Virus record (IMG/VR): IMGVR_UViG_3300009184_000029
Location: 158,830 to 222,829 of that record
Direction: 5' to 3' (one strand)
Length of the DNA: 64,000 nucleotides
Positions 12,340 through 60,024 of this stretch are shown here, one piece after another. Below the pieces are notes generated by a model. The model worked only from the letters and a program-made list of their open reading frames with translations, did no database searches and was not told the origin of the DNA. Every line of letters starts with the position of its first letter. The first letter of the stretch is position 1. The position numbers and the translations under genes were made by a program.

Positions 12340-12343
12340 AAAT

Positions 12344-14226: not shown

Positions 14227-17200
14227 ATGGGTAAAAACTTTAGAATTAGGACAAAGGTTGGAGTAGATACGAGAGTTGAAGCCAAGTTAGAACAAGATTT
14301 TGATTTTTTAGAAATTCTTTCTTTAAAATTAACTCAGCAACAAGTTTACAATAGACCAACCTCAAACTATGGAGTTTTATGTGGTAGAGTTTACGCTAAT
14401 AATGGTTTTGGTGTTCCTAACGCAAAAGTATCAGTTTTTATTCCTCTAACTGATGAGGATTCTAACAACCCTGTAATATCAAGAATATATCCTTATAGAA
14501 ATTTAAATACTCAAAATGAAGATGGGTATCGGTATAATTTATTACCATATGTTGCATCATATACAGGACACGTACCAACAGGAACATTTCCTGATAGAGA
14601 AGACATTTTAAAAGATAAATCTCTAAGTTATACCTATGAAAAATATTATAAATTCACCGCCAAAACAAATGATGCGGGTGATTTTATGATATTTGGAGCA
14701 CCTGTTGGGAATCACACAATTGTGATGGATGTTGACGTTTCTGACATTGGTCAGTTTTCATTAACACCCCAAGATTTATTAAGAATAGGTAGAGCAACTG
14801 AAGCTCAACTTGATGGTGCTAAATTTAAAGAATCAACAGATTTAGATTCTCTACCTCAAATAATCGGAATTAAAAAGACAATAGATATTAATCCATTTTG
14901 GGGTGACCCTGATTTGGCGACAATCGCGGTAACAAGAGTTGACTTTAATCTTTTAGAGGAGGCAAATATTGAATTTAAACCTACATGTGTATTCATGGGT
15001 TCATTAATTTCAGGTATTGATACTAAGGCAATTTCTAAAACGTGTAAAGTTAAAGTTAGAGCAGGTGATTTATGTGAATTAATTACAGGTCCTGGACAAA
15101 TTTTAGCGATTAGACAAACAGTTAATTTTGATAAATTAGGAAGACCCATATTAGAACAGTATAAGGTAGAAAATGACGGACAGGTAATTGATGAAAACGG
15201 TACTTGGATGATTGACCTACCAATGAATATGGATTACGTGTATACTGATGAAGAAGGTAAACAACAAATAAGTTATGACCCAAGTATTGGAATACCAACA
15301 AAAGGTAGATATAGATTTAAAATTAAATGGAATCAATCTGACAAGTCAACAGAACAATTAAAAAGAGGGTATTTCTTAATTCCCAACGTTAAAGAATATG
15401 GATGGGATAAAGATAATTTGGGATTAAATCCGGCGAAAGATTTAAACCCTCCCGCAACTGTACCCCCAACAATTAGTGCTGCGACAATAAGTACACCATC
15501 GGTAACTGGACCTCCTGTTATATCTTACCAAATTGACCAACCATTGGTTGATTTTGCTAATACTTCTTTTGGTAAATTTACAAGGTCATATTCATTTAGT
15601 TTAAGTTGGTTTGATTATGTAAATCCTCAGTCAGCAATTAATTGTGACGACACATTCTATGAGTTCCAATATAATAAAGTTTATACTGTATCTCAGTTAA
15701 TTGACAAATATAGAAGTGGAAAATTACCTGCAAGATTTTTAGGATTTAAAAATTGTTTAGATGATAAATGCGCCGGAAATACTGAAAAATTTCCAGTTAA
15801 TGACGGACACTATAACATAACATTTTTATACGTATTACTTACCGCATTAATAACTTTAGCAAAACCAATTGTTTTAATTATTGTTTTAATATTTGCGATT
15901 TTAGCTTGGATTTACAGATTAATTTCTGAGTTTATTTGCGATAAAATAGTTCCGTTACTTAGAAATTTAGGAAGAACAAGAACTGTTGCCGGTTTTGATT
16001 TTGTTATTTGTCCTACGTGTAATGGTACTGCAGATGATTTAGAGAATAAATGGTGTGATAGACCAAACCCATTTACAGATAAAAGATTTCCTTTGTTATT
16101 ACAAGATGATGGTGATTGTTCATTTTGTGACTGTAAAGATAGTGGAGAATCTTTGGCGGGAAATGTATATGGAGCGGTTAACTCTAGTTGTTTGGCAGAC
16201 CTTTCATCAACATCTAAATGGTTATATGATGTTAGTATAAGTACAGAATTACAGTCACCACCTCAAATAAATTTATTGGCGGGATTTACGTCTCCATTTT
16301 TTAATTTCGCAACAAGAATGCCAACCACATGTGTATATCCTCAAACATATTCGTATGGTTCATTAGCATTTGATTATGGGTCTGTGTTTTTAACTGAGCA
16401 AGGTGTTGGACCCGCAGTCTTTTCACCGTCATTAACAATTTCTGAAAGATTAAATTTATTTAATACTAAGGCTAAGTATTTCAATAATGGTGGATTAGAT
16501 ATAGATACATTTACATTACCGGCAAGTCATGGTTCAAGTTTAATTAGTACTGAATTAAGCCAAATGAATGTTAACAAAGGAGGATGGAATAGAATTAAAC
16601 TTACAATTTCTTCCGAAGATGCGATTCAAGACCAAACAGATTGGCTAGCAGCTCAAAAACTACCATTACCTGGAGGGGCATACCCAAGTGACGGTTCTTA
16701 TCACTTGGATAATGTAATGATTTTACTTGTTGATGAGAACTGTAAATTGGGTACTACAAGAGCTGGTACTTTAGTTACTTTTAATAATCCTACGTTATCA
16801 TCCGACGTTAATTTAACAGGATTTACAACAACTTCCCAAGGACAAGGAGGTCAAACAATATTTACTCCAACGTTTAATCCATATGGTGGAAGACAAATAA
16901 CGGGAACTCCAATACATAAATCAGCTCAAACTTCAACAACTGCGGGTAAAAATTTGGATGTTTGGTATGCTGACCCAAGTGATGCTAATGTTGAGCCAGT
17001 AATTTTTAATCCTAATCTAATTGTAAAATGGAACCTTATAACTGACCCGTATGTACAAAGTTTAAAAAATATTATAGATGCTAACCAAACAATTTATGGT
17101 GGGCCATTTAATATTAACAATATAAGGGGTGATGCTCCAGGGTCCACATATACAGATGAACTTACATTCCCATATGTAGGTAATAAAGCTTCATACACTA

Positions 17201-20200: not shown

Positions 20201-20754
20201 TTTCACCTAGAAGAATAATATATATTGAAAATTCAAATATACCTTTAAATACTGATTATTATTTAAATATATTAACCAAGTCACAAGAAGTTCCTTTTTA
20301 TCATTGGAATTTGGATGATAAAAATTATAGGCCTGGTTCTTACGCTTCACCTTCTACTGCTGGTCCAAATATATTTGGTTCTGAATCTAATAATTGGTTA
20401 ACAGGACCTGATTCTGATAGTGTTGCTATTACTACTCCTTTTAACCAAAACAATCAAACATTGTCAAATAATAATAAATTTTTCAAATACAAATATCAAA
20501 AAGTAGATAGATTAGACTCTGTTTCAGACACATTCCAAAATTATAATACATCACAAACACGTCTGACCGGATGGATATGGGATTATGATGCAACTATAAA
20601 TAAATTAAATTATCAAATCACATCAACTAAAGGTTCTAAACATCCAAGAATTATGAATGGGGCTCCTTATTATTTTTATTTTGGATTAATAAAAGGTGCA
20701 ACTGCTTGGGATAGATTTGTTAGAAGATGGATAAATACTACTGAAGAATTATAA
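14227..20754 (+). CDS. Very large baseplate-region structural protein (2175 aa) with N-terminal carboxypeptidase-regulatory-like fold and an internal hydrophobic hairpin
   Basis: GVLCGRV...GVPNAKVSV and TNDAGDFMIFG.PVG.HT motifs; ~40-aa hydrophobic stretch; N/S/T-rich. Confidence 0.65.
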   Translation: MGKNFRIRTKVGVDTRVEAKLEQDFDFLEILSLKLTQQQVYNRPTSNYGVLCGRVYANNGFGVPNAKVSVFIPLTDEDSNNPVISRIYPYRNLNTQNEDGYRYNLLPYVASYTGHVPTGTFPDREDILKDKSLSYTYEKYYKFTAKTNDAGDFMIFGAPVGNHTIVMDVDVSDIGQFSLTPQDLLRIGRATEAQLDGAKFKESTDLDSLPQIIGIKKTIDINPFWGDPDLATIAVTRVDFNLLEEANIEFKPTCVFMGSLISGIDTKAISKTCKVKVRAGDLCELITGPGQILAIRQTVNFDKLGRPILEQYKVENDGQVIDENGTWMIDLPMNMDYVYTDEEGKQQISYDPSIGIPTKGRYRFKIKWNQSDKSTEQLKRGYFLIPNVKEYGWDKDNLGLNPAKDLNPPATVPPTISAATISTPSVTGPPVISYQIDQPLVDFANTSFGKFTRSYSFSLSWFDYVNPQSAINCDDTFYEFQYNKVYTVSQLIDKYRSGKLPARFLGFKNCLDDKCAGNTEKFPVNDGHYNITFLYVLLTALITLAKPIVLIIVLIFAILAWIYRLISEFICDKIVPLLRNLGRTRTVAGFDFVICPTCNGTADDLENKWCDRPNPFTDKRFPLLLQDDGDCSFCDCKDSGESLAGNVYGAVNSSCLADLSSTSKWLYDVSISTELQSPPQINLLAGFTSPFFNFATRMPTTCVYPQTYSYGSLAFDYGSVFLTEQGVGPAVFSPSLTISERLNLFNTKAKYFNNGGLDIDTFTLPASHGSSLISTELSQMNVNKGGWNRIKLTISSEDAIQDQTDWLAAQKLPLPGGAYPSDGSYHLDNVMILLVDENCKLGTTRAGTLVTFNNPTLSSDVNLTGFTTTSQGQGGQTIFTPTFNPYGGRQITGTPIHKSAQTSTTAGKNLDVWYADPSDANVEPVIFNPNLIVKWNLITDPYVQSLKNIIDANQTIYGGPFNINNIRGDAPGSTYTDELTFPYVGNKASYTINYDVDLIPPYYKYPADIEYFQVIENYSIDSLVNKWAPDSPSNALSLKRRYLYNQMQVIRWRKFKYFLSSVNNTAPGTTSPNLVNTPIGTNNTSLYLQPIVYTNQLKPHELFQNFGKLRVVILQRGVDPYSPKFKMKIDLSRLLGFTDFKTGFSVDSDGRVIQNYYRLNQPIQGSSRSQSHYYYLGKKTYDFQGYMQIDDDSFPLTEYGRLFFKSKFFKPSPTQFTSFSSNILQKYSALGDRKINYPSSSQRPFKNFTSYFKWFTFCANASFSNNLYYGTSGTNTIPASTTPLFANGGQSPITTTTNPISSQYTQTLGSTPRLLLYRCNNDPSISTTNIAPGINPNYLNFTQGPVPDGNNTYNQFYFTPIPANSANASANGDVLVLSNNSSLAQDGITSSYSIQTTLQNRVIYDGIGVKAHYNNLFTQRWKKTSSTNSNSFWSAFIGVNKYVNNQAWGPGWTVNNGSSDSQVINTLEEYPGYTGYFPYEDIGGGSYMWAELNFDTNSGQALSDPDLGYKYLTQLYYVPRYDTGLTVTYEKLTGAIIPTTNAALNGSTASNDWPNQSEGDIFNIFRSDRLPTSDNTDTEGKNSFVLYQNNLFAVYIIDTTQTGVTVSFSQSAQNNSGLALENEPVSADGVGEFPLQNVLNTISDCTLSKNLGCYSVNTNGDVTVSSLPGCSQVPKDSQNDSVKVSFFENGCYILVRTDFNFIYSFQSDAKIVQELFLRIKYNLAICLNVISHNFNNEWINGTLLAFPFKQVTIFGGNNQVSQKNFCKETMMFNYQSNNFYYRSSPYALGSDRYTLNTDGTVSNTSEAGTNAGQFVGQRKNYRNTGNIFGATNASLGNNRQLLFPTTILDMGPVNPNIQEYVYSDDYDGYMLNNLNSTTFQSTSDIINFFTLTRLLRQGLSLNRFTNQDGAFVPDVVIDSLFDARGSEKAVDGDFAQSIAINSQLGIINFTPENYTSDTVKVFTRSTGTGNDTIYSPTFGIFFSGSTSQRDLVSPRRIIYIENSNIPLNTDYYLNILTKSQEVPFYHWNLDDKNYRPGSYASPSTAGPNIFGSESNNWLTGPDSDSVAITTPFNQNNQTLSNNNKFFKYKYQKVDRLDSVSDTFQNYNTSQTRLTGWIWDYDATINKLNYQITSTKGSKHPRIMNGAPYYFYFGLIKGATAWDRFVRRWINTTEEL

Positions 20755-22550
20755 TGAATAGTGGACAAGAAAATACAATAGTTTTAGGTTCTTTAAGATA
20801 TAAAGGGGCCGTTAATACTAACTTGTTTATTCAAGAAGTTTTAGTCGGTAAACAAAAAGAAATTATAGATTCTGAAAGAAGTATAACGGTTAATTTACCA
20901 AAATTATATCAAGACGAAAGACAAAAATCTAACATCTTTAGGCCATCGGCTAAGTTTGATTTAATTTTAAAAAATTCATATGTTGGTAAAACAGATTATA
21001 GAAGATTTCAAAATCAATTGTATTATACTAACGCTTTAAATGATAAGATTGCGGATGTTAATAACGGTTCTACATATTTGGCGTGGCAAGGATTTCCACA
21101 ATATAATGAATTTGATTTTATTAGAAATGACAATGATTTACCTTCATGGACTCTATCTGGAGGGGCACATTTAATTACATCACAAAAAGATGTTACTGAA
21201 AGGAATTGGTATTTTTATATGTCATATGTTTATAAAGGAGACCCAGATGTACCGATGAGATTTTATGAAGGTACGTCAACATCACCATCAATTAGTTGGA
21301 TGGCAAATCAAGGAGTACCATTTAAAACGGGAAGAAATCAAATTGATGGGAAAAATTTAGTAACATTTAAATGTATTACTAATCACGGATTAAGTGTTGG
21401 TGAAAGTGTAAATTTATTAATTAATAATAGTGCGTCAACTGTAACAGTTTATAGTTTAGGAGATGGTTCTTTTGGCTCTGATGAATTTATTTTTAACTTA
21501 TATAATGTTTGGTCAGACAGTTTAACGCCATATCCTCCTAATTTATGGGGTACTGCTAAAAGAGTTTTGAGACTTGATGCAAGTGGTAATAGTATATCGG
21601 AATACGTGTCTAAATATTATGTTAGAGTACATAAAATTATTACAAAAAATTCAGATAAAGTATTAACAAAGGCTGGTTTTAATCAGAATGCTTATAGGAC
21701 GACAACTAAATATGAGTCATCGGCTTTAACACCTAATTTAGTATCTAGAATATCAGTTAAAGAAGGTAGTCAAGAATATAATTTATCATTTAATACTGAT
21801 ATTAATGTTACAAATTTAATTGACAACCAAAAAAGACCTGTATCTGAAATTTTTTATACTATAATAAATAAAGGTCAGTTTGGGTGGTTTAATAGACCTG
21901 TTGTAATTCAACAAGGTATATTACCTAAAGGTCTATTAACAGGATGGGAATTTAATATGAGTACCTCAAATAGTGGTAATTCTTGGTGGAACACTTCAAC
22001 ACAACCATTAAATACTGATAATATACCACTGTTAAGTTATACTAGAACCTCAGGGGTTACTAAAACTTTTTACTATAACAATGAACCGAAAAATGGAGAA
22101 ATTTACGGAGATTTATGTGAGTGGAACGACTTAGAACAAATTGAAAAAGTAGTATCAAAAAGAATACATAAATTAAAATTTAATCAAGATATTTTTGTTA
22201 CTGATACAAATACAAATAATAGTGGTGGTTATTATTATTATCCTTTTTATAGCCAAAAAATTAGACAATTCTCTAATTATTTAGAAGAAGGTGACCCGGT
22301 ATTAACTACAAATATACCTGATTACGCATATTACTCAACTAATAATAATTTGTTCTATTGGAGAGATATATACGACTATGGTATTTTTGATTCTGATAAT
22401 CAAGGAATAAATTTTCCATATTCAAATGACGGACATTATCCGTATTCAAATTACGTATTTAAAATAATACCAGAAGGTTCTAATTTTGCGGATGCTAATT
22501 CTAACCAAGATAATTTAGTTCAATTACCTTTATCAGATGCCTGTGAATAA
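20754..22550 (+). CDS. Putative structural protein (598 aa)
   Basis: TAATG coupling to the upstream gene; beta-rich N/S/T/Y composition; HGLSVGESV motif. Confidence 0.6.
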   Translation: MNSGQENTIVLGSLRYKGAVNTNLFIQEVLVGKQKEIIDSERSITVNLPKLYQDERQKSNIFRPSAKFDLILKNSYVGKTDYRRFQNQLYYTNALNDKIADVNNGSTYLAWQGFPQYNEFDFIRNDNDLPSWTLSGGAHLITSQKDVTERNWYFYMSYVYKGDPDVPMRFYEGTSTSPSISWMANQGVPFKTGRNQIDGKNLVTFKCITNHGLSVGESVNLLINNSASTVTVYSLGDGSFGSDEFIFNLYNVWSDSLTPYPPNLWGTAKRVLRLDASGNSISEYVSKYYVRVHKIITKNSDKVLTKAGFNQNAYRTTTKYESSALTPNLVSRISVKEGSQEYNLSFNTDINVTNLIDNQKRPVSEIFYTIINKGQFGWFNRPVVIQQGILPKGLLTGWEFNMSTSNSGNSWWNTSTQPLNTDNIPLLSYTRTSGVTKTFYYNNEPKNGEIYGDLCEWNDLEQIEKVVSKRIHKLKFNQDIFVTDTNTNNSGGYYYYPFYSQKIRQFSNYLEEGDPVLTTNIPDYAYYSTNNNLFYWRDIYDYGIFDSDNQGINFPYSNDGHYPYSNYVFKIIPEGSNFADANSNQDNLVQLPLSDACE

Positions 22551-23418: not shown

Positions 23419-23419
23419 C

Positions 23420-24511
23420 ATGGAAGTAAACGATAAATATATAAAAATTTCACCTGAGGTTATTAGTGGTGACATATTCCCACAAACCTATGATGGTAAA
23501 ACATTTGGGATATATTCGAGTATGACTATGGTATTAAGCGCGGGAACTAATGGGTCATCATTATTAACTGGGCTTACAATACCAATAGTTTTGGAACAAT
23601 CAGTACATAACATTGGTTATTATGACGTTTTTGATGGGGAGGTATTACAAAAAGATACTGTGAGTAATTTTATTTTTACAACAGGGTCAACTACAAATCC
23701 GTATGTAATATATGTTTATAACACTTCAGATATAACTACTAAAAAATATTTAGAATTATCAACCTACGAAATAAATTGGGGGGATAGTACTATGTATTAT
23801 CCTTACAACGCATTTAATTCTGCTCACACTTATTCTATATCATCTGCTTATACAATAACATTAAGACAAACTAATCCATGGGGAGTTATTAACGTAGTAA
23901 AAAACATTAAAATCCCATATGACCAAACTCCCGACGATTCAAATCCAAACGGAACTGCCACTTTTACACCATCAGGTGGGTCATGGATTGGTACCCCGAT
24001 AAGTTATGACTATATTTTTCCCTTTGATTCTAATATTAATAAATCATATCAGGTAACAAGTAATTTCCCTCAGTTTTATCAAAATTTACCATTCGCCGTA
24101 ACCTCTTTTACTAAGTCTGAATTAACGACATTAGAAAAATATACATCACCTCAATACATAGTTAACTACGAAGTATATTTAAACCAACAATATGTCGGTA
24201 AAATAACTTCTAGTTCACAGACCCAAATTAATTATACGATTTACGATATTGACTATATAGATTTTTCTGACGGGACTTCAGTTAGGGTTGCGTATTCATC
24301 AGGTGTTACTCCTAATAATATCACACAAAGTGCAATAACAAAAAATGAGGTATTAATGAATATGGTTGAGCAGCCACAAATACAATCAAATGTATTTATA
24401 GAAAGAGGTAAGAGTTCAGGACTTGAATCTTTAAGAAGGATTGGTGAAGTTGATAGTATTAGGGATTTGGAGAGATATGGATATAAATATTTTAATATAA
24501 TTGAGAACTAA
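23420..24511 (+). CDS. Putative structural protein with PKD-like segment
   Basis: INWGD...HTY...YTITL PKD-like pattern. Confidence 0.6.
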   Translation: MEVNDKYIKISPEVISGDIFPQTYDGKTFGIYSSMTMVLSAGTNGSSLLTGLTIPIVLEQSVHNIGYYDVFDGEVLQKDTVSNFIFTTGSTTNPYVIYVYNTSDITTKKYLELSTYEINWGDSTMYYPYNAFNSAHTYSISSAYTITLRQTNPWGVINVVKNIKIPYDQTPDDSNPNGTATFTPSGGSWIGTPISYDYIFPFDSNINKSYQVTSNFPQFYQNLPFAVTSFTKSELTTLEKYTSPQYIVNYEVYLNQQYVGKITSSSQTQINYTIYDIDYIDFSDGTSVRVAYSSGVTPNNITQSAITKNEVLMNMVEQPQIQSNVFIERGKSSGLESLRRIGEVDSIRDLERYGYKYFNIIEN

Positions 24512-24513
24512 AT

Positions 24514-25419
24514 ATGGCATTAGGTACATACGGAACATTAAGACCAGCTGACGTTTCACCGGCGGATGTTGACATACTACTAAATTACACTCCATCGAGA
24601 GATGTGACTGAAAATTTTATTTTAAAAAAATTAAATTCACAATCTATATTAAAACCATATTTTCATAATCAAAATACTGGTGGTAATAATAATGTTGAAT
24701 TATTGGGAGGGTTATATAACCTAACTTTACCTGCTACTGAGTTTAATCAACTTGGAATATATACTTTATATATTAGACCTGCGGAAATTAGAACATCAAT
24801 CACAGATTGTGGAGTTTTATCTGCGTTACCAAATGTAAGAGGATTAGTTATTGATTTAAATAATGTCCCTGACCAGTTTAGAAATAAATTCACCTCTCAA
24901 GGTTTAGTTGGGTTTAGAGTTGAATATTTAAATTCTGATGGAACAAAAGTACCAAACTTTTTTAGAGTTGTTACTTCTTCATTTTATTGTGAGGCAGTAA
25001 CTTCCAATCAATCAAATACTGCGCAAAAGGCGGTTAGATATAGATACGTTAATGGTCAATCTAATTTAATGTTTTTAACATTAACACCATCATCATCACC
25101 AACTAATAATCCTGCATCGGTACCTTTCATAGGACAACCTGGACAAAATATTATAATTACTAATACATATTTTAATCCTACAACTATTGAAGTTGAGATG
25201 GTTGAACATGACGCATCCACATTGGCTATTGCTCTTTATGGTAATCAAACAAAATCGATGGATGATGGTATCTACACAATTTATGACAATAATAATAACA
25301 TCTATAGACAATATAACTTGTATGAAATACGTGACCAATTTAATGAGTTACTTTATGAGGTTAGACAAGAACGTACAAATATTGACTTTAGTAAAAACTT
25401 TGGAACAATAATCGCTTAA
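24514..25419 (+). CDS. Putative structural protein (301 aa)
   Basis: Operon member with 2-nt spacing. Confidence 0.6.
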   Translation: MALGTYGTLRPADVSPADVDILLNYTPSRDVTENFILKKLNSQSILKPYFHNQNTGGNNNVELLGGLYNLTLPATEFNQLGIYTLYIRPAEIRTSITDCGVLSALPNVRGLVIDLNNVPDQFRNKFTSQGLVGFRVEYLNSDGTKVPNFFRVVTSSFYCEAVTSNQSNTAQKAVRYRYVNGQSNLMFLTLTPSSSPTNNPASVPFIGQPGQNIIITNTYFNPTTIEVEMVEHDASTLAIALYGNQTKSMDDGIYTIYDNNNNIYRQYNLYEIRDQFNELLYEVRQERTNIDFSKNFGTIIA

Positions 25420-28907: not shown

Positions 28908-28908
28908 A

Positions 28909-31086: not shown

Positions 31087-31090
31087 TTAA

Positions 31091-32068: not shown

Positions 32069-32076
32069 TAATTATA
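32069..32076 (+). promoter_or_regulatory. Putative late promoter variant TAATTATA
   Basis: TAATTAT ends 5 nt before ATG 32081. Confidence 0.4.
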
Positions 32077-32080
32077 GTAT

Positions 32081-32923
32081 ATGTCATTTGTTTATAAAAA
32101 TCCACTAACCGCCATTGTAACACAAGGACCCCAAAGTGTTAAAAGAACACAAACTTTTGGTAATTCTTATAGTGTTAATAATATTGGTGGATACATGGAG
32201 GTGTATACTTTAAACGATTTAGTATACACTATCCCGTCAGGTACGACAGGTATTGTAGAATATTCGGGAAATACCATACCTGTTGATTTTTATAAAGGTA
32301 ATGGTAACCCATGGTCATATAATGTTTTAAGTTTAGGTTCTGATAATATTTCTTCGGGTAGAAGAAGACTTGGTATGTTAGTTTATGTTTATGAACAAGA
32401 CCAAGTTTATCAGTTTCATATTAGCGGTTACACTTCTTTATGGACAGCAGCGACTGCTAGTACTAACTGTGTTAATATTTCTGATTTTGGTACCACGATT
32501 AAAAATAATACTGTTGCAGGTCAAAATTTTATTAACGCTTGGACTGCTAGTACTATTGAGGATGTTAGTGGATACACAAGTGAAACTGCGGTTTGGAGAA
32601 AGTTTAGTACTGGGAATAGTAGTGGGGGAACGGGAATTACTGGGTCAGGTACCACAGGATATATTCCAAAATGGAATTCCAGCTCAAGTCTAACAAACAG
32701 TTTAATCCGAGATAATGGAACCACAGTATCCATAGGCTCCCCATCAAGTGTTGCCGCCATACTTGAGGTAGCCTCAACGTCACAAGGGGTTTTATTCCCT
32801 AGAATGACACAATCGCAAAGATTGGCAATTAGTTCACCAACCCCTGGTTTAATTGTTTATCAAACTGATAGTACTGACGGGTTATATATTTATAAAGTTG
32901 GAGGATGGATACAAATAATATAA
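32081..32923 (+). CDS. Fibre-like structural protein with Bacteroidota-type C-terminal motif
   Basis: RRLGMLVYV, GSGTTGYIPKW, LEVASTSQGVLFPRMTQSQRLAISSPTPGLIVYQTD. Confidence 0.65.
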   Translation: MSFVYKNPLTAIVTQGPQSVKRTQTFGNSYSVNNIGGYMEVYTLNDLVYTIPSGTTGIVEYSGNTIPVDFYKGNGNPWSYNVLSLGSDNISSGRRRLGMLVYVYEQDQVYQFHISGYTSLWTAATASTNCVNISDFGTTIKNNTVAGQNFINAWTASTIEDVSGYTSETAVWRKFSTGNSSGGTGITGSGTTGYIPKWNSSSSLTNSLIRDNGTTVSIGSPSSVAAILEVASTSQGVLFPRMTQSQRLAISSPTPGLIVYQTDSTDGLYIYKVGGWIQII

Positions 32924-32924
32924 T

Positions 32925-34352: not shown

Positions 34353-34405
34353 TATTCAGAAATATATTTATTTTAATATATTTTCTTACAAAATGATTCC
34401 TCAAT

Positions 34406-34413
34406 TATTTATA
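34406..34413 (+). promoter_or_regulatory. Putative late promoter TATTTATA
   Basis: TATTTAT ends 5 nt before ATG 34418. Confidence 0.55.
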
Positions 34414-34417
34414 TAAT

Positions 34418-36439: not shown

Positions 36440-36454
36440 AAATCATATTAGAAA

Positions 36455-36462
36455 TAATTATA
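36455..36462 (+). promoter_or_regulatory. Putative late promoter variant TAATTATA
   Basis: TAATTAT ends 7 nt before ATG 36469. Confidence 0.4.
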
Positions 36463-36468
36463 TAAACA

Positions 36469-38718
36469 ATGGGATATATACAAAGAAACACCGAAGGATT
36501 ATTAGTTACTAGATTAACAGATACTGGTAGATTAAAATTATCACAAGGTAATTTCAATATTAGTTATTTCCAAGTAGGGGACAGTGAACTTAATTATACT
36601 GCAATAACTGAGTCTTCATATACTAATTTGGATGGTAAATCTATAAATTTTAGATTCAGTGGTTCAAGTGTATTAGAACCCCCATTTAATGCTCAAAATA
36701 CAACAGGTGGGTTACAATCAACAAAAAACGCTGTAAAATACCCAATGTACCTTAATGGTGAAGGGACTACTCAGTATGGTATTCCATTTATGGATTCAAT
36801 TAATGAATCAATTTATAACACTGCAACACCATTAGGATTCTTTTCAGCATGTACACAAGGTTATATGCCTTATATAACTTCTGCTTATACTCTTAATTCT
36901 AGAATGTATAGAAATACTTCAGCTTTTACACCAAGTAATCTTTTTACCGTGTCAGGCAATTTAAACTGTACTAATAGTGCTTCTGCAACTACAGGATTAG
37001 TTGGAAGTTACCTAAGGATATTTTATTCAAATCAAAGTGCTAGTTGTAATTGTGGGACAATACTATCTGTATTTCCATCAATGGTTTATTTAGTTAATAG
37101 TTATAACATTTCGACTTCTGCAGTTACTTTTGATAGAATCACACCTAACTTTAACATATTAGGTTCTGTACCGGGTCAGAGTAGATTATTTTATTATCCA
37201 TCGGGTATGACCGCATTGTATGATACTGTAACACCATCTCAATATTGGTATACTGCGGTAACAAGTTATGAATCTATTTGTACCCCTAATGATGGATACT
37301 CTAAAGTATGGAATATGAATATTCCTTGGACTGAAAATCCTGCAGGATTAAATGATACTGTTAATGAAGGATATGGTCAGTTTGGTTCTGTAAATTATAT
37401 AGGTACTAAAGAATATTTGGGATACATGAGTTCTTTAGGACAATCAGCAACAAGTGAAGTTTACTATGTTAACTCTTTAGGTGATGAAGTTGTTGTAAAA
37501 CCCGAAGACCAAAAAGCGATTGCGATTATACATTATACAAATAATAGTATTATAAATTATTATGGTGAAAAATTTGCGGTAGAACCTAATAGCACAATTT
37601 TAGATTCATCAGGTTACGCTTCTAATTTTAAAGTAATTATGCCAACATTGATGTGGCATAAAAATACCGGAGCAACACCATATGGTGAGACTTTTTATAT
37701 TAATCCTCCATCATTTATTGATGATACAGATGTTTTTAAAGTTAATTATTTAACATCTACTAAGAATTCTGATATGAATTATCCTGGAATTAGATATTTC
37801 GATTTATGGGATAATTATGGTCAGGCTAATGGTAAACCAAGTAGAGTTGGTAAAGTTTTTCCTGATGATAAGTTAGTTGTAATTGATGATGAAGAAATAG
37901 TTGCATCAATGTCATGGGCGTCTAATAGAAATTTCACATTACCTGCACCTAAAGTATCATTAACTCCACCAGATGTTTGTAACCAAAATAGTAATTCAGT
38001 TGGTATTTTGACTGGTACTGACCAAACAATGTGGGTTACATATAGATTTGATAGTGTATTATTCGATGGAATGCATTGTAATTATTATCAGTCAATACAA
38101 GGACCATCTACAGGTTGTTCAATATCAACTCAAAACGTTTCAGTACAATTTGGACCGGAATTTGCATTCATGAATACAGGTTCCACTACAGGATATAGTT
38201 TAAATACTTTTTATATTTTAGCACAAATTACGGACACTGGAGAAAGACCATCCCCAACAGGGTGGAAACAAATGAATTATAATTCAGATTTAGTAGATTA
38301 TGATGTGGTCGGAGCCGGCTCAAACAATTTCATAACAAAAACAGGTATGACTAATGTTAGTTTTGTCATTGACCCTACAAGCTATAATTTGGGTACCTCC
38401 TATGATTTAAGTACTGTATTAACCTTACCGACAAATGGTACTACTGATACGCAAGTTAATTTTGGTGATGAGTATTTCTTCTATGGTAGTATTGAAACTG
38501 ATATTCAAGCAACAATATATGAGATGAGATATAGAATAAATTTACCTAATAATTTATTTACAACTTCATCAAATCCTTCATGGACGGATACATATTCTCC
38601 GTATATGACTGAGATTGGTCTTTACGATTCCGAAAAAAATCTTATGATTTTATCAAAGTTTCAAACACCTGTTAAACGAGACGGCATTCAACAGGCGGTT
38701 GTTAAACTTGATTTCTAA
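36469..38718 (+). CDS. Baseplate/tail-fibre attachment protein (tail-collar-fibre-like termini with large insertion)
   Basis: N-terminal LTDTGRLKLSQGNFNISYFQVGDSE and C-terminal YMTEIGLYDSEKNLMILSK..PVK motifs. Confidence 0.6.
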   Translation: MGYIQRNTEGLLVTRLTDTGRLKLSQGNFNISYFQVGDSELNYTAITESSYTNLDGKSINFRFSGSSVLEPPFNAQNTTGGLQSTKNAVKYPMYLNGEGTTQYGIPFMDSINESIYNTATPLGFFSACTQGYMPYITSAYTLNSRMYRNTSAFTPSNLFTVSGNLNCTNSASATTGLVGSYLRIFYSNQSASCNCGTILSVFPSMVYLVNSYNISTSAVTFDRITPNFNILGSVPGQSRLFYYPSGMTALYDTVTPSQYWYTAVTSYESICTPNDGYSKVWNMNIPWTENPAGLNDTVNEGYGQFGSVNYIGTKEYLGYMSSLGQSATSEVYYVNSLGDEVVVKPEDQKAIAIIHYTNNSIINYYGEKFAVEPNSTILDSSGYASNFKVIMPTLMWHKNTGATPYGETFYINPPSFIDDTDVFKVNYLTSTKNSDMNYPGIRYFDLWDNYGQANGKPSRVGKVFPDDKLVVIDDEEIVASMSWASNRNFTLPAPKVSLTPPDVCNQNSNSVGILTGTDQTMWVTYRFDSVLFDGMHCNYYQSIQGPSTGCSISTQNVSVQFGPEFAFMNTGSTTGYSLNTFYILAQITDTGERPSPTGWKQMNYNSDLVDYDVVGAGSNNFITKTGMTNVSFVIDPTSYNLGTSYDLSTVLTLPTNGTTDTQVNFGDEYFFYGSIETDIQATIYEMRYRINLPNNLFTTSSNPSWTDTYSPYMTEIGLYDSEKNLMILSKFQTPVKRDGIQQAVVKLDF

Positions 38719-38730
38719 GTAATATCAATT

Positions 38731-39321
38731 ATGAAAAATTTAAAAAATACACCCAAGATATTGGGACTAGATGTTTCTACAAAAACAATTGGGTGGGCAT
38801 TATTTGACTTTAAAACTAAAGAATTATTGGAATTAACTCATATTTCTCCTGTTATAAAAAGTAAGTCTGACAATAAAATGGAGGAAATGATACTAAAGTC
38901 TGAAATTTTTAAAAAGAAATTAGACGAGTATAAAAATTTAGGTATTATTAAAGTAGTAATTGAGGAACCTTTATTAAATTCTAATAATGCTTACACCATC
39001 GGAACTCTTTTAAGATATAATACATTAATTACTAAACAAGTATATGATGTACTTGGAGTTGTTCCTGAGTTTGTGTCTACTTATAACTCAAGAAAATTAG
39101 CATTTCCTGAATTAGTTCAAAAAAATAATAAAGATAAATTTGTATTATTTGGTGGTTATCCTAAAGACTGTGATAAAAAACAAATTATTTGGGAATTAGT
39201 CTCTAAAAAAGAACCACAAATTACATGGTTATATACAAAGAATAATACTTTAAAGAAAGAAAACTTTGATATGACCGACGCTTATACCGTTGTTCTTAGT
39301 TATTTAAATTCTAACAATTAA
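38731..39321 (+). CDS. RuvC-like Holliday junction resolvase / RNase H-fold nuclease
   Basis: ILGLDVST..IGWA, VVIEEP, DMTDAY acidic tetrad. Confidence 0.8.
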   Translation: MKNLKNTPKILGLDVSTKTIGWALFDFKTKELLELTHISPVIKSKSDNKMEEMILKSEIFKKKLDEYKNLGIIKVVIEEPLLNSNNAYTIGTLLRYNTLITKQVYDVLGVVPEFVSTYNSRKLAFPELVQKNNKDKFVLFGGYPKDCDKKQIIWELVSKKEPQITWLYTKNNTLKKENFDMTDAYTVVLSYLNSNN

Positions 39322-41479
39322 TATCGTTAGTCACTCCACTAGCACTTCCTATTCTATTTGATGTAAATGTGAAATCTGATGGGTATGATGGATTCCATCC
39401 GGCAATCTGTTGTATATATGTCAGTTTAGGACCTGTAAAGGTACTACCATAGAAAGATTGGTTAATTTCTACACCAGGTACTGGTTCCTTTTGAACTATT
39501 GTTCTCTCACCTATTCCTAAATAAGGACATACTCTATAAACGTATGTGTATATTGACGCTGATGGTGTAGGTGTATTAGTTGGTGTTAAAGTAGGTGTTG
39601 TGGTAACAGTTTGAGTCGGTGTTTGACTAGGTACAGGAGTACAGAATCTACAATCAAATAAATTCCCACTATCAACACTATTTAAAGTGTTTAAAGGTGA
39701 ACTGAATACTTCCCCAATAAACGCTCCGCAAATTGATACGTTATCAACGGTTGCTTTAATTATTGCCCCTATTGGTAGAGTCCAAGCCACACTAACTAAA
39801 TAAACTTGACCTGTCGAACAATCTCTAAGTTGTTTTGTTAACTGACTTGTAAATGATTTTTGGAATATATTAAATGTTGTTTCACCTGTAACAAAACAAT
39901 TCTTAGCTGCGTTAGTTGGGGTTAATGTTGGTGTTTGAGAAGGTAGGGGAGGACTTATTGTCACACCTGATACTGAAACTGATTTACCATAACAAACTTG
40001 AGTTGGAGTTGGTGTAGTTGTCGGAGTTGTTGTTAATGTTGGGGTAAGTGTGGGAGTTGGTGTGATTAAACTTGAAATTGAAAAATCACAATTAAAAATA
40101 GAATCAAATGTGAATGTTGAACAATCGATATTAGGTGTTGGGGTAGGTGTTGCAGGTATGTTCGCAAAAAATGATGAACTGAAATCAGGACATAATCCAT
40201 AGTAAGGACTTGCTCCCGATATAACACAATCATATCCTGGTAAAGTACCTAAACACCATCCTGTATAACCTGTGTTATAATATATAAATGCGGGTGTCGT
40301 TGATGTATTAGAATAATAGATATTATATCCGTTATATGTCTTATATCTATAATATGTTCCATCATATTGTGAGTACCCACTAAAGTTAGTGTAAATATAA
40401 TATTGTGAAGTTGGGCAACCTGTAAGAGGGGTTACTGTTGGTGTTGGGGTTGGAGTTGATGTGTTTGAAGGTGATACAGTTGGAAATGCTGATAAAGTTG
40501 GTAGTGGTGTATGTGTAATACTTGGAGTTGGAGTATTACTTGCAGTCGGTGTATTGGTTACACCTGGTGTTTCAGTTATTGATGGTGTTGGTGTTTGAGT
40601 GGATGTAATTGTTGGTGTAGGACTTGGAGTTCTTGTTGGGGTATTTGATGGTGTGATTGAAATTGTTGGAGTTACAGTTGCGGTTTGTGTTGGGGTTGGA
40701 GTCACTGAAGTTATACAACCTGCATCAGTTAAACATGCGATATTTGGATTGTAGTATGTACTTGTGAAAGCTGATGAATTTGCGACAGAATTATATAAAG
40801 TGTTATCTTTATAATAACTAAATCTTACATAATCACTTAAATTTGTTAGGGAACTATTAACATTAACACATATTGTTGTGGACGTTATTGAGGTATAGGA
40901 TAATTTATTATACACCCCAGGACACGTGTAGTACTCTAAAGATAATCTGTTATTATTTACTGGTGAAGTATTACCTGACGCCGAATTAAGGTCTGATTGT
41001 CGAATTGTAAATTGAATACAATTACATAAAGATGTTGTTGATGGGGTTACGGTTGCGGTTGGTGTTTTAGTTTGAGTTGTGGTTGGAGTACTTGTTAATG
41101 TAATCGTAGGTGTCGGTGTTTGAGTTGCAGTATTAGTTGGGGTTGGTGTGTGAGTAGGAGTTGCCGAAGGAGTGTTAGTTGGAGTTGATGTTGGAGCAGC
41201 GGTTGAGGTTGGTGTAGGTGTTGGAACACTAGCACATGTGTATATTGTTGTACATTGTGTACAACTTGTGTAAGTTATACCATTACCTGACAAGTAGTTA
41301 TACACAGGTAATCCTGATGTAAAAGTAGTATATACTGCTAAACTACAGCCTGTGTAACTATCCGTCTGAATATAGTACGTTGTACCTGCGGAGAAAGAAT
41401 ACGTGGGTGAAAGGTATTGAAACTGAAATCGTGAACCATCACAACAACCCGAAAATCCTATCCAATTTAAACTTGCCAT
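39311..41479 (-). CDS. Modular Cys-rich protein with about six Pro/Thr linkers
   Basis: Small Cys-containing domains alternate with TPT tracts; coupled to 41479..41700. Confidence 0.75.
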   Translation of the reverse strand: MASLNWIGFSGCCDGSRFQFQYLSPTYSFSAGTTYYIQTDSYTGCSLAVYTTFTSGLPVYNYLSGNGITYTSCTQCTTIYTCASVPTPTPTSTAAPTSTPTNTPSATPTHTPTPTNTATQTPTPTITLTSTPTTTQTKTPTATVTPSTTSLCNCIQFTIRQSDLNSASGNTSPVNNNRLSLEYYTCPGVYNKLSYTSITSTTICVNVNSSLTNLSDYVRFSYYKDNTLYNSVANSSAFTSTYYNPNIACLTDAGCITSVTPTPTQTATVTPTISITPSNTPTRTPSPTPTITSTQTPTPSITETPGVTNTPTASNTPTPSITHTPLPTLSAFPTVSPSNTSTPTPTPTVTPLTGCPTSQYYIYTNFSGYSQYDGTYYRYKTYNGYNIYYSNTSTTPAFIYYNTGYTGWCLGTLPGYDCVISGASPYYGLCPDFSSSFFANIPATPTPTPNIDCSTFTFDSIFNCDFSISSLITPTPTLTPTLTTTPTTTPTPTQVCYGKSVSVSGVTISPPLPSQTPTLTPTNAAKNCFVTGETTFNIFQKSFTSQLTKQLRDCSTGQVYLVSVAWTLPIGAIIKATVDNVSICGAFIGEVFSSPLNTLNSVDSGNLFDCRFCTPVPSQTPTQTVTTTPTLTPTNTPTPSASIYTYVYRVCPYLGIGERTIVQKEPVPGVEINQSFYGSTFTGPKLTYIQQIAGWNPSYPSDFTFTSNRIGSASGVTNDINC

Positions 41480-57822: not shown

Positions 57823-57886
57823 AAATTAATGCATTTGCCAATGTTGTTTTGCCAGCACCTGGCTGACCTGTAAACCAATAAATCAT
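57806..57886 (-). pseudogene. cysC: Truncated adenylylsulfate (APS) kinase N-terminus
   Basis: MIYWFTGQPGAGKTTLANALIYEVRL* carries the CysC-type W.TG..GAGKTT P-loop; ATGA-coupled to the sulfotransferase stop. Confidence 0.7.
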
Positions 57887-59965: not shown

Positions 59966-60024
59966 AATTAATTTTTTTAAAAAAAATAATTTAAGAATAT
60001 TATTGGTAAATAGAAATCCAATAA

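What the first reader, a model, noticed from the sequence alone, without database searches (positions are those of the whole stretch)
14227..41479. Pervasive [ST]-[GA]-x-T motif in structural proteins: candidate sequon for a phage virion glycosylation system
Seen: structural-module proteins are full of a 4-residue motif. Examples are TGLT, TGST, SAYT, SAHT, SGVT (23420); TGVT, TGYT, TGGT, SAGT (25419); TGLT, SGYT, TGAT, SGQT (28909); SGWT, SGGT, SAFT (31091); SGTT, SGNT, SGYT twice, TAST (32081); SACT, SAYT, SAFT, SATT, SAVT, SGMT, TGAT, TGST, TGMT (36469); SAGT, TGYT, SGVT twice, TGET (39311); and tandem SATT/SANT/TGGT in the 60248 fibre. By eye it is rare in the replication enzymes. The motif recurs in apparently unrelated folds, so it looks like a selected linear motif rather than a domain. 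Inference: it is a modification sequon (O-glycosylation on Thr/Ser) read by phage enzymes such as the GT9-like protein, possibly then sulfated. It differs from the known Bacteroidota O-glycosylation motif D-(S/T)-(A/I/L/V/M/T). I know of no description of such a phage sequon.
Basis: partly seen in the sequence, partly recalled or inferred. Interest (0 to 1): 0.8.

Follow-up and report, generated by a model that had tools for sequence, protein, structure and literature searches.

The report
Candidate glycosylation motif on phage virions
The outer tail, fibre and sheath proteins of this uncultured freshwater jumbo phage and its many relatives are studded with a short motif, Ser/Thr - Gly/Ala - any - Thr, on exposed turns, and because these phages also carry conserved sugar-adding enzymes the motif is a good but unproven candidate for the address label of a virion sugar coat.

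Summary
[ST][GA]xT is the top proline-free pattern among about 3.7 million tested in this phage's virion-module proteins (155 sites vs 54 expected, z=13.9). It survives 8-residue local shuffles. It is a protein-level, directional, three-position unit: [ST][GA] is enriched only when Thr sits at +3. It occurs in unrelated protein families, in hundreds of relatives (36469 homologues: 14.2 vs 1.7 expected), and is absent from T4 and Flavobacterium phage immuto. Sites turn over between homologues. They are absent from buried parts (portal, tube, gp25, gp6-like, sheath core) and concentrated in the outward sheath insertion (38 vs 10). Motif-free homologues have Asp/Asn-Gly at the same columns, so the sites are surface turns the fold does not need. 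Outside the window the genome has clade-conserved glycosyltransferases flanking a hypervariable sugar island (GMD, fucosyltransferase-like GT11s, aminotransferase, methyltransferase), with no lipid-linked or oligosaccharyltransferase genes found. Best reading (about 0.45): an acceptor sequon for direct, phage-encoded O-glycosylation of the virion surface. Main rival (about 0.3): an unmodified lineage-specific ST-turn motif. No modification is shown, and the GT link is circumstantial. "GT9-like" rests on a language-model lead only.

The parts
23420..24511 (+). 363-aa virion-module protein with a PKD-like core; 7 sites vs 0.67 expected
   Evidence: 120 homologues average 7.1 vs 0.86 expected, with some invariant and some turning-over columns. 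The AF2 model is poor apart from a central beta-sandwich.
36469..38718 (+). 749-aa conserved protein of unknown fold; 11 sites vs 1.9 expected
   Evidence: 79 homologues average 14.2 vs 1.72 expected. 80 different columns carry a site and none is conserved in 90% or more of sequences. No PDB fold match. Motif-free homologues exist and carry Asx-Gly at the same columns.
32081..32923 (+). 280-aa protein; 10 sites vs 1.2 expected; paralogue of genome ORFs 124657 and 112915
28909..31086 (+). 725-aa SprB-repeat protein; 12 sites vs 3.8 expected
   Evidence: 23 homologues average 12.9 vs 4.6 expected.
25419..28907 (+). 1162-aa structural protein, weakly enriched (7 vs 2.8, p=0.025)
   Evidence: Homologues average 4.0 vs 1.6 expected.
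20754..22550 (+). 598-aa structural protein, weakly enriched (3 vs 0.6)
60248..63961 (-). 1237-aa fibre; 26 sites vs 9.6 expected. Residues 101-282 are a UspA1/YadA-type trimeric beta-roll head. It also has SANTISATT / SGGT.TGGT repeats shared with genome ORF 126199.
   Evidence: PDB 3pr7 match at E=1.3e-25. Here part of the motif (the N-T) belongs to the repeat fold.
59093..59965 (-). 290-aa ORF directly downstream of the fibre; a possible GT9-like glycosyltransferase (a lead only)
   Evidence: No Pfam hit at E<=1 and no PDB sequence hit. In the Atlas, 38 of the 100 nearest clusters belong to a set in which PF01075 is common, score 0.98. A homologue exists only in relative G001.
58707..59093 (-). 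SET-domain protein (putative protein lysine methyltransferase) in the same minus-strand run
   Evidence: PF00856, E=2.4e-9.
57883..58707 (-). Sulfotransferase in the same minus-strand run
   Evidence: PF13469, E=1.4e-22. A homologue exists only in G001.
11881..14182 (+). gp25-like and baseplate-J (gp6-like) inner baseplate proteins with zero sites; an internal negative contrast
38731..39321 (+). RuvC-like resolvase (not structural) with zero sites, also in 78 homologues

Best explanation
phi-[ST]-[GA]-x-T-phi is a lineage-specific short linear motif placed on solvent-exposed turns of the outer virion proteins. These are the fibres, distal baseplate proteins, sheath insertion domains and, weakly, the capsid protein. 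The lineage is a large clade of uncultured freshwater jumbo phages with predicted Flavobacteriia hosts.

It most likely serves as the acceptor sequon of a phage-encoded protein O-glycosylation system that works directly in the cytoplasm. Clade-conserved glycosyltransferases would recognise the turn and add the first sugar to a hydroxyl. Position 1 is the residue that replaced Asp/Asn, and Thr4 is either a recognition element or the acceptor. Enzymes of a strain-variable island would then extend the glycan with 6-deoxyhexose/fucose, amino, methylated or furanose sugars. The result would be a variable sugar coat on the tail and fibres.

Shown: the motif, its specificity, its selection as a unit, its surface location, its clade distribution, and the presence and architecture of the GT genes.

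Inferred: that the GTs act on proteins, that they read this motif, and which residue is modified.
For: 1. The motif is real, directional and sharply defined: S/T at position 1, G/A at 2, T at 4, with charged residues excluded from -1 to +6.
2. The three positions behave as a unit. [ST][GA] is enriched 4.8-5.8x only with T at +3 and sits at 0.93-0.99x otherwise. The full motif occurs 1.4-1.6x more often than independent columns predict, and single-position variants are mostly under-represented.
3. It occurs in unrelated families. Density is maintained across hundreds of homologues while individual sites turn over.
4. It is not generic. T4 shows 27 vs 25.6 expected. Flavobacterium phage immuto shows forward about equal to reversed.
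5. Surface location:
   - Portal, tube, head completion, gp25 and gp6-like have zero sites.
   - In the 1052-aa sheath, all 38 sites of four genomes lie in the insertion region absent from T4 and immuto (38 vs 10.2 expected), and none lie in the conserved core (0 vs 3.5).
   - Motif-free homologues carry D/N-G at the same columns.
6. Enzymes:
   - Three GTs are conserved in all complete relatives: GT2 g87554 (weakly SunS-like), GT-B-like g88359, and the GT2_5 protein g103695. A fourth GT2 at 22.7 kb has homologues in all three, weak in G004 (34% over 89 aa).
   - They flank an island whose sugar genes differ in every genome: GMD/GT11/GT17/DegT/MTase here; DegT/PglD-like/GT8 in G001; GT92/FkbM in G004; UDP-Galp mutase in G005.
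   - The GT2_5 neighbour is present in 74 of 80 related loci, and all 60 g110692 orthologues are motif-rich.
7. No Wzy_C/PglL-type transferase and no initiating phosphoglycosyl transferase was found. This is consistent with direct transfer.
8. Precedents: chloroviruses glycosylate their capsid in the cytoplasm with virus-encoded GMD/GMER and GTs at non-canonical sites (PMC5408694). 'Moraphages' (large aquatic phages with predicted Flavobacteriia hosts) have four core GT orthologous groups (PMC12619734).
Against: - No modification has been observed. There are no virions, isolates or proteomes.
- The GT link is co-occurrence only, without informative negatives. Long contigs of the motif-free lineages could not be obtained.
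- The GTs could glycosylate DNA. A ThyA-family gene that could be a base hydroxymethylase is present, and a dUTPase/dCTP-deaminase-like gene adjoins the GT2_5 gene. They could also act on host envelope glycans.
- Immuto has a GT cluster but no motif.
- In the fibre, part of the motif belongs to a known repeat fold.
- Position 3 is often a conserved hydrophobic residue and Thr4 is very conserved, as expected for a structural element.
- ST-turns are structural equivalents of the Asx-turns found in motif-free homologues.
- Avoidance in non-virion proteins is only a weak trend: 39 vs 59 expected, from non-independent orthologues.
- The AF2 models were too poor to measure exposure directly.
Confidence: 0.45

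Rival explanations
1. An unmodified structural micro-motif. This would be a lineage-specific way of building exposed beta-turns or beta-arches: an ST-turn, then a small residue, then a capping Thr. It would have spread through the clade's beta-rich virion proteins because it stabilises turns or lowers surface charge. No post-translational modification would be involved, and the GTs would serve something else.
For: - Motif-free homologues have Asx-Gly at the same columns. Asx- and ST-turns are isostructural (textbook knowledge).
- Position 3 is often a conserved hydrophobic residue and Thr4 is near-invariant at common sites.
- Hydrophobic residues at -1 and +5 suggest strand edges.
- In the 60248 fibre the N-T belongs to the UspA1-type repeat, and the fibre repeats carry many sites.
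- Charged residues are excluded around the motif.
Against: - The fold does not need it: nine full-length homologues have zero sites.
- T4 and immuto virions do not use it.
- [DN]G turns are not depleted elsewhere in the same proteins, and [ST][GA] without Thr at +3 is not enriched. So this is not a general turn-chemistry shift.
- Ala is as good as Gly at position 2, which is unusual for a Gly-dependent turn.
- High positional turnover with maintained density is typical of selected linear motifs.
- This rival gives no reason for confinement to outward-facing parts.
Confidence: 0.3
2. A functional surface feature other than a sequon. Arrays of exposed hydroxyl-bearing turns would themselves bind something, such as host capsular or slime polysaccharide, mucus-like polymers, or mineral or ice surfaces. 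They would give weak multivalent adhesion along the tail and fibres.
For: - The motif is located on outer virion parts and fibres.
- Thr-rich flat arrays are known binding surfaces in beta-roll proteins. The fibre gave a weak hit to an ice-recrystallisation-inhibition beta-roll (E=0.0099).
- Thr content is elevated in motif-rich lineages compared with motif-free ones.
Against: - Sites are scattered single turns in unrelated folds rather than regular arrays, except in the fibre repeats.
- A strict three-position grammar with a free position 3 is more typical of enzyme recognition than of a binding surface.
- No ligand is known.
Confidence: 0.1
3. A sequon for a different modification of Ser/Thr, such as phosphorylation, O-sulfation or acylation, rather than glycosylation.
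For: A sulfotransferase and a SET-domain methyltransferase are co-oriented directly downstream of the motif-rich fibre.
Against: - The sulfotransferase is present in only one of three complete motif-rich relatives, and the SET gene in none.
- No kinase was looked for or seen.
- The conserved candidate enzymes in the clade are GTs.
Confidence: 0.08
4. A statistical or compositional artefact of Ser/Thr/Gly-rich, low-complexity structural proteins and a motif chosen by eye.
For: The proteins are S/T/G-rich. Some counts come from paralogues and internal repeats.
Against: - The excess survives 8-residue local shuffles, and permuted patterns are flat.
- It ranks first of about 3.7 million patterns.
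- It is replicated in hundreds of homologues.
- It is absent from the equally S/T-rich immuto fibres.
Confidence: 0.02

Closest known systems
Chlorovirus (PBCV-1) autonomous cytoplasmic glycosylation of the major capsid protein
   Same: The virus encodes nucleotide-sugar enzymes (GMD) and multiple GTs. Glycosylation is cytoplasmic and independent of host secretory machinery. Acceptor sites are not the canonical sequon. The glycan has a conserved part and virus-specific decorations (PMC5408694; here).
   Different: The chlorovirus glycans are N-linked to Asn on the capsid protein of a eukaryotic virus. Here the candidate acceptor is Ser/Thr, the capsid is only weakly enriched (4 vs 1.1), the main targets are tail, fibre and sheath proteins of a tailed phage, and nothing has been shown biochemically.
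Mycobacteriophage virion O-glycosylation (Freeman et al. 2023, as cited in PMC12619734)
   Same: Phage-encoded GTs decorate virion proteins of a tailed phage. The proposed role is shielding the surface.
   Different: There the glycans sit at the C-termini of capsid and tail-tube subunits (as summarised in PMC12619734). Here the tail tube has no sites, and the motif is internal, on turns of many outer proteins. No defined sequon of this form has been described there to my knowledge (the paper itself was not available).
Bacteroidota general O-glycosylation, sequon D-(S/T)-(A/I/L/V/M/T)
   Same: The likely host phylum. O-linkage to Ser/Thr within a three-residue grammar.
   Different: That motif is not enriched here (0.64-0.95x). 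Asp at the preceding or first position is disfavoured. That system is periplasmic and lipid-linked, whereas phage structural proteins assemble in the cytoplasm and no oligosaccharyltransferase was found.
Autotransporter adhesin plus dedicated heptosyltransferase pairs (AIDA-I/AAH, TibA/TibC; BAHT family)
   Same: A GT-B enzyme related to LPS heptosyltransferases hyper-glycosylates Ser/Thr of a repeat beta-structure adhesin in the cytoplasm, and the two genes are adjacent (PMC4358343). Here a UspA1-type beta-roll fibre is followed directly by an ORF whose nearest neighbours carry Glyco_transf_9.
   Different: The ORF has no direct Pfam or PDB match. It is 290 aa against about 400 aa for TibC. 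It is missing from two of three motif-rich relatives, so at most it is a fibre-specific extra and not the general system.
ST-turn / Asx-turn structural motifs
   Same: Ser/Thr at the first position of a turn followed by a small residue. Homologues have Asp/Asn-Gly at the same columns.
   Different: A generic ST-turn does not require Thr at +3, accepts no special lineage distribution, and would not be confined to outward-facing virion parts of one phage clade.

Membership tests
Phage/virus-encoded virion protein glycosylation system | The virus encodes glycosyltransferases and nucleotide-sugar enzymes | tested here: met
   GT2 x3-4, GT2_5, GT11 x2, GT17-like, GT92/GT2_4-like, GMD (392 bits), DegT, an RmlD-like protein and a methyltransferase. 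Three GTs are conserved in all complete relatives, and a fourth GT2 has homologues in all three, weak in G004.
Phage/virus-encoded virion protein glycosylation system | Glycans covalently attached to virion proteins | not testable with these tools
   No isolate, virion preparation or proteome exists. This needs mass spectrometry or glycan staining.
Phage/virus-encoded virion protein glycosylation system | The GTs act on protein rather than on DNA or host glycans | tested here: inconclusive
   No lipid-linked machinery was found, and the GT2 is weakly similar to the peptide glycosyltransferase SunS. But a ThyA-family gene and adjacent nucleotide-metabolism genes leave DNA glycosylation open.
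Protein glycosylation sequon (a selected linear acceptor motif) | Short motif enriched beyond composition, with defined residues and a free position | tested here: met
Protein glycosylation sequon (a selected linear acceptor motif) | Occurs in unrelated proteins, with positional turnover but maintained density among homologues | tested here: met
Protein glycosylation sequon (a selected linear acceptor motif) | Located on solvent-exposed surface | tested here: met
   This is indirect: sheath insertion vs core, zero sites in buried parts, and Asx-Gly at homologous columns. Direct accessibility could not be computed because the models were poor.
Protein glycosylation sequon (a selected linear acceptor motif) | Presence or absence co-varies with the modifying enzyme across lineages | tested here: inconclusive
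   All motif-rich genomes and loci have the conserved GTs. Motif-free lineages were found, but only on contigs too short to show their GT content.
Bacteroidota general O-glycosylation | Sequon D-(S/T)-(A/I/L/V/M/T) | tested here: not met
   0.64-0.95x of expectation in the motif-rich proteins of four genomes.
BAHT-type adhesin heptosylation (AIDA-I/AAH, TibA/TibC) | A GT9-related GT-B heptosyltransferase encoded next to a repeat beta-structure adhesin | tested here: inconclusive
   The fibre head is homologous to UspA1. The adjacent ORF is GT9-like only by Atlas neighbours, with no Pfam or PDB match.
Trimeric autotransporter (YadA/UspA1) head repeat fold, for the 60248 fibre | Sequence homology to a solved left-handed beta-roll head | tested here: met
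   PDB 3pr7 (UspA1), E=1.3e-25, fibre residues 101-282.
'Moraphage' lineage of large aquatic phages (PMC12619734) | Large genome, Flavobacteriia-type host signals, DnaJ/DnaK, several core GT orthologous groups, no multisubunit RNAP | tested here: inconclusive
   The features are compatible: relatives are 270-308 kb, SprB repeats, DnaJ, conserved GTs. No sequence comparison with the published genomes was possible.

The most novel reading that the evidence does not exclude
[ST]-[GA]-x-T is the first sequence-defined sequon for phage virion glycosylation. A conserved set of phage glycosyltransferases would read it on surface turns and, together with a hypervariable sugar cassette, coat the tail, sheath and fibres of a widespread clade of freshwater Bacteroidota jumbo phages with strain-specific O-glycans. 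That would be a phage 'glycan shield' evolving like an O-antigen locus.
Probability: 0.4. Interest if true: 0.85.

Novelty: new variant of a known kind. Interest (0 to 1): 0.72.

Why it matters
Virion glycosylation by phage-encoded enzymes has been shown in only a few systems, and to my knowledge no acceptor rule is known for any phage. If this motif is such a rule, several things follow:
- Glycosylation sites could be predicted from sequence across hundreds of uncultured jumbo-phage genomes.
- It would explain why glycosyltransferases are core genes of these phages.
- It would point to a variable sugar coat as a major axis of phage surface evolution, affecting host recognition, defence evasion and particle stability in fresh water.
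- It would supply a compact tag-plus-enzyme pair for cytoplasmic glycoengineering.

Even if no modification exists, a strict three-residue grammar imposed on exposed turns of unrelated virion proteins in one clade is an unusual evolutionary signal that needs an explanation.

Tried and rejected
Hypotheses tested and rejected:
- **DNA-level signal.** Motif codons follow background usage, and the pattern is absent in other frames.
- **Local compositional patchiness.** The excess is unchanged by 8-residue window shuffles.
- **A motif cherry-picked by eye.** It ranks first among about 3.7 million patterns.
- **A generic property of T4-like virions or of S/T-rich Flavobacterium-phage fibres.** T4 and immuto are both negative.
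- **Avoidance of deamidation-prone N-G/D-G.** [DN]G is at expectation, and [ST][GA] is enriched only with Thr at +3.
- **The host-type Bacteroidota sequon.** Not enriched.

Searches that led nowhere:
- Pfam and PHROGs on the motif-rich proteins gave almost nothing.
- The 'phages' collection has no close relative.
- AF2 of 23420 (pLDDT 53) and 36469 (pLDDT 61) were too weak for accessibility mapping, and Foldseek found no fold for 36469.
- No PDB sequence hits for g103695, g106821 or the 59093 ORF.
- Attempts to obtain long contigs of motif-free lineages failed.
- The Freeman et al. paper is not held.

Corrected assumption: I first took 36469 and 38731 for sheath and tube. 38731 is a RuvC-like resolvase, and the true sheath and tube lie at genome 142076 and 146235.

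Caveat: searches used proteins pre-selected for motif richness, so their absolute fold-enrichments are inflated. Only the contrasts between patterns are used.

Full report
**Context.** The window is the last 64 kb of a 222,829-bp single-contig IMG/VR virus record (31% GC, estimated 76% complete). It is a T4-like jumbo myophage. It encodes gp32, a RecA/UvsX-like protein, DnaB, RNR, gp25 and baseplate J in the window. Portal, major head protein, a 1052-aa sheath and the tube lie elsewhere in the genome. Nothing in the cultured-phage collection is close. The best match is a 26% identical baseplate wedge in Flavobacterium phage immuto. IMG/VR and metagenomes hold hundreds of relatives, and complete ones are 270-308 kb. 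SprB repeats, DnaJ and conserved glycosyltransferases fit the recently described 'moraphages'. Those are large aquatic phages with predicted Flavobacteriia hosts and four core GT orthologous groups (PMC12619734). I could not test identity with that lineage.

- The 14 ORFs of 14227-41479 carry 71 [ST][GA]xT sites against about 26 expected (z about 9).
- The excess is unchanged when residues are shuffled only within 30-, 15- or 8-residue windows.
- The reversed motif, four permutations, [ST][GA]xS, [ST][GA]T and [ST][GA]xxT are all at expectation.
[ST][AG]xT is the top proline-free pattern (155 vs 53.6, z=13.9), and every runner-up is a subset or superset of it.
- The signal is at the protein level. 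Motif codons match background usage, and the corresponding DNA pattern is absent from other frames.
- Position by position, S (3.7x) and T (2.6x) are the only enriched residues at position 1. A (4.6x) and G (3.7x) are the only ones at position 2, and T (3.7x) at position 4.
- Position 3 is free but avoids D, E, K, R and P. Position -1 favours L/V/I and position 5 favours I/Y. Charged residues are excluded from -1 to +6 (the proteins were pre-selected, so only the contrasts count).

**Where the observation needs correcting.** 'Pervasive' overstates it.
- Within the window only 23420, 28909, 32081, 36469 and the 60248 fibre are individually strong.
- 20754 and 25419 are weak. 14227, 31091 and 39311 are not significant. 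Four ORFs show nothing.
- 38731 is a RuvC-like resolvase.
- Genome-wide, the excess (251 vs 95) comes from about a dozen ORFs, and the remaining 214 ORFs have 68 vs 57 expected.
- Some enriched ORFs are paralogues: 32081 with genome ORFs 124657 and 112915, and the 128925/130387/131916 group. The fibre shares the repeat LPxSGGTxTGGTxFxSGLTANTISATTYxNLPxSGLT with genome ORF 126199, which alone has 54 sites.
- Residues 101-282 of the 60248 fibre are homologous to the UspA1 head beta-roll (3pr7, E=1.3e-25). The N-T of its SGNT units belongs to that repeat.
- Even so, 36469, 23420, 28909, g110692 and g81182 share no similarity by BLAST. The 36469 and 23420 families are unrelated at profile level (hhalign probability 0.3%).

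**It is a clade property, not a quirk of one genome.**
- 79 homologues of 36469 average 14.2 sites vs 1.72 expected (range 7-21).
- 23420 homologues average 7.1 sites vs 0.86 expected across 120 database homologues, and 8.9 vs 1.24 in 15 related loci.
- 28909 homologues average 12.9 vs 4.6.
- 60 g110692 orthologues average 14.3 vs 3.2, with a minimum of 9.
- Adjacent conserved genes (38731, 24514, primase, phosphoesterase, SbcC) have essentially none.
- Three complete relatives show the enrichment in the same orthologues. Even 26%-identical homologues remain enriched.
- Two outside controls are negative. The 23 T4 structural proteins, including all fibres, have 27 vs 25.6 expected. Flavobacterium phage immuto, with S/T-rich fibres and its own GT cluster, has forward 105, reversed 91 and expected 69, with no protein beyond p=0.008.

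**How the sites evolve.** In the 36469 family, 80 different alignment columns carry a site and none is conserved in 90% or more of sequences. S/T interchange at position 1 and G/A at position 2. Position 3 is often a conserved hydrophobic residue, and Thr4 is nearly fixed where a site is common. The three positions are coupled. The full motif occurs 1.4-1.6 times more often than independent column frequencies predict. One-position variants ([ST][DN]xT, [DN][GA]xT, [ST][GA]x[VI]) are mostly under-represented, at 0.46-0.93x. The exception is [ST][VI]xT, at 1.08x in the 23420 family. Permuted controls lie between about 0.8 and 1.4. Across motif-rich proteins, [ST][GA] is enriched 4.8-5.8-fold when Thr is at +3 and not at all otherwise (0.93-0.99x).

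**Where the sites sit.**
- Buried or inner, conserved virion parts have none. Portal, tube, head completion, gp25 and the gp6-like protein total 0 against about 2.2 expected.
- The capsid protein has 4 vs 1.1, mostly in or near the segment not aligned to T4 gp23.
- The sheath is 1052 aa against 659 aa in T4. All 38 sites in four genomes lie in the roughly 600-aa insertion that T4 and immuto lack (38 vs 10.2 expected from the region's own composition; reversed motif 12). The conserved core has 0 vs 3.5. In T4 gp18 the conserved C-terminal part forms the inner layer of the sheath and the variable domains face outwards; this is my knowledge of the gp18 structures and was not tested here.
- A deep profile search found nine full-length homologues of 36469 with zero sites and ordinary Thr content (6-7%). 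In two such lineages the neighbouring structural genes are also motif-free.
- At the columns where most family members have [ST]-G-x-T, these homologues have DGQT, DGHT, EGQT, NGTN, NGSK, NDNT, DGSS and the like. Asx-Gly is the classic signature of an exposed turn, and Asx- and ST-turns are isostructural (textbook knowledge).
- So the fold does not need the motif, the sites are surface turns, and the lineage-specific change is a hydroxyl residue in place of Asp/Asn, together with Thr at +3.
- A general avoidance of deamidation-prone N-G/D-G is excluded, because [DN]G is at expectation in the same proteins.

**The enzymes.** It has no Pfam match at E<=1, no PF01075 match exists anywhere in the genome, and it has no PDB sequence match. 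Only its protein-language-model neighbours point to Glyco_transf_9 (38 of 100 nearest clusters). It and the sulfotransferase occur in just one of three complete motif-rich relatives, and the SET gene occurs in none. At most they form a fibre-specific cassette, reminiscent of adhesin/heptosyltransferase pairs such as TibA/TibC (PMC4358343).

Much more relevant is a gene run outside the window, at genome 86.8-108.7 kb.
- It encodes GT2 enzymes, a GT-B-like protein, GMD (392 bits), two GT11 fucosyltransferase-like proteins, GT17-like and GT92/GT2_4-like proteins, DegT, an RmlD-like protein, a methyltransferase, DUF5672, DUF3431, and a 620-aa protein with a Glyco_tranf_2_5 domain.
- Comparison with complete relatives shows a conserved frame: GT2 g87554, GT-B-like g88359, PhoH, the GT2_5 protein g103695 and its neighbours. 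A GT2 at 22.7 kb also has homologues in all three, weak in G004.
- This frame surrounds an island whose content differs in every genome. G001 has DegT x2, a PglD-like acetyltransferase, FkbM, GT2 and GT8. G004 has GT92 and FkbM. G005 has UDP-galactopyranose mutase.
- The GT2_5 gene neighbours the anchor gene in 74 of 80 related loci.
- The conserved GT2 is weakly similar to SunS, a prophage peptide glycosyltransferase.
- No Wzy_C/PglL-type transferase and no initiating phosphoglycosyl transferase was found (the record is incomplete).

**Interpretation.** The best-supported reading is that the motif is an acceptor sequon for direct cytoplasmic O-glycosylation of the outer virion. Conserved GTs would read the turn, and a variable island would diversify the glycan. 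The closest working analogy is the chlorovirus system, which combines virus-encoded GMD/GMER and GTs, cytoplasmic glycosylation and non-canonical sites (PMC5408694). It is not a member of that system, because the linkage there is to Asn on the capsid. It is also not the Bacteroidota D-(S/T)-(A/I/L/V/M/T) system, whose motif is not enriched here. I put this reading at about 0.45.

Against it:
- Nothing is shown biochemically.
- The enzyme link is co-occurrence without informative negatives. I could not obtain long contigs of motif-free lineages.
- The GTs could serve DNA hypermodification. A ThyA-family gene is present, and nucleotide-metabolism genes adjoin the GT2_5 gene.
- Immuto shows that a GT cluster does not imply this motif.
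- The motif has properties of a structural element, namely a conserved hydrophobic position 3 and a fixed Thr4.

The main rival, an unmodified lineage-specific ST-turn motif, gets about 0.3. A binding surface gets about 0.1, another modification about 0.08, and artefact about 0.02. A weak deficit of the motif in non-virion proteins (39 vs 59 pooled over four genomes, the lowest of eight patterns) points the same way as the sequon idea. But the orthologues are not independent, so I do not lean on it.

**Verdict.** The phenomenon is best classed as a new variant of a known kind: virus-encoded virion glycosylation, here with a candidate sequence-defined sequon. It remains unproven until mass spectrometry or a GT/substrate co-expression test is done.

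Noticed in passing
window 57883-63961 (minus strand): An apparent operon on the minus strand: a UspA1-head-like fibre, a possible GT9-like ORF, a SET-domain protein, then a sulfotransferase. That places three candidate protein- or glycan-modifying enzymes directly behind one fibre. The GT9-like ORF and the sulfotransferase recur only in relative G001.
   Followed up: partly
window 31091-36439 and 39311-41479: Thr-Pro linkers are hugely over-represented in 31091, 32925, 34418 and 39311 (TPT 78 vs 10 expected, PTP 35 vs 5). They produce spurious BLAST hits between these ORFs. Such linkers are classic O-glycosylated spacers in secreted bacterial enzymes, but these four ORFs are not enriched for [ST][GA]xT.
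   Followed up: partly
outside the window: genome 91034-103698 (L093/L094): A hypervariable sugar-biosynthesis island of about 12 kb lies between conserved GTs. Its content differs in each complete relative, in the manner of an O-antigen locus.
   Followed up: yes
outside the window: genome 142076-145234 (L096:2076-5231): The tail sheath is 1052 aa. It has an insertion of about 600 aa between the N- and C-terminal parts shared with T4 gp18 and the immuto sheath.
   Followed up: partly
outside the window: genome 3879-4964 (L089): A thymidylate-synthase-family ORF of 371 aa whose Pfam match is split in two by an insertion of about 54 aa. It could be a normal ThyA or a base hydroxymethylase, which bears on whether the DNA is hypermodified.
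   Followed up: no
outside the window: genome 106821-108035 (L094:6821-8032): A 404-aa protein that is very conserved across the clade (63-80% identity in more than 500 viral contigs). It has no Pfam or PDB match. Its sequence (GWLGGSSH..DL, KSQLKVIEAG) looks GT-B-like by eye, so it may be a further core glycosyltransferase. This is unverified.
   Followed up: partly
L143, L158, L159 (metagenome contigs): Sister lineages whose 36469 homologue and neighbouring structural genes are motif-free with ordinary Thr content (6-7%). Two of them have very low GC (23.6% and 26.5%). In L158 the flanking genes are 49-70% identical to this phage's genes, but the 36469 homologue is only 26% identical, which suggests allele replacement.
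   Followed up: partly
window 14227-20754: A 2175-aa ORF directly after baseplate J, in the syntenic position of gp7. It has no Pfam hit and no homologue among the 80 related loci at the thresholds used.
   Followed up: no
window 49068-49868 and 56763-57683: A full sigma-70-type factor (regions 1.2, 2 and 4) and a complete DnaJ (J domain, zinc-finger domain and C-terminal domain) are encoded by the phage.
   Followed up: no
outside the window: genome 14504-24741 (L089/L090): A family of five paralogous small proteins of about 100-110 aa (29-61% identical) on the minus strand, of unknown function.
   Followed up: no
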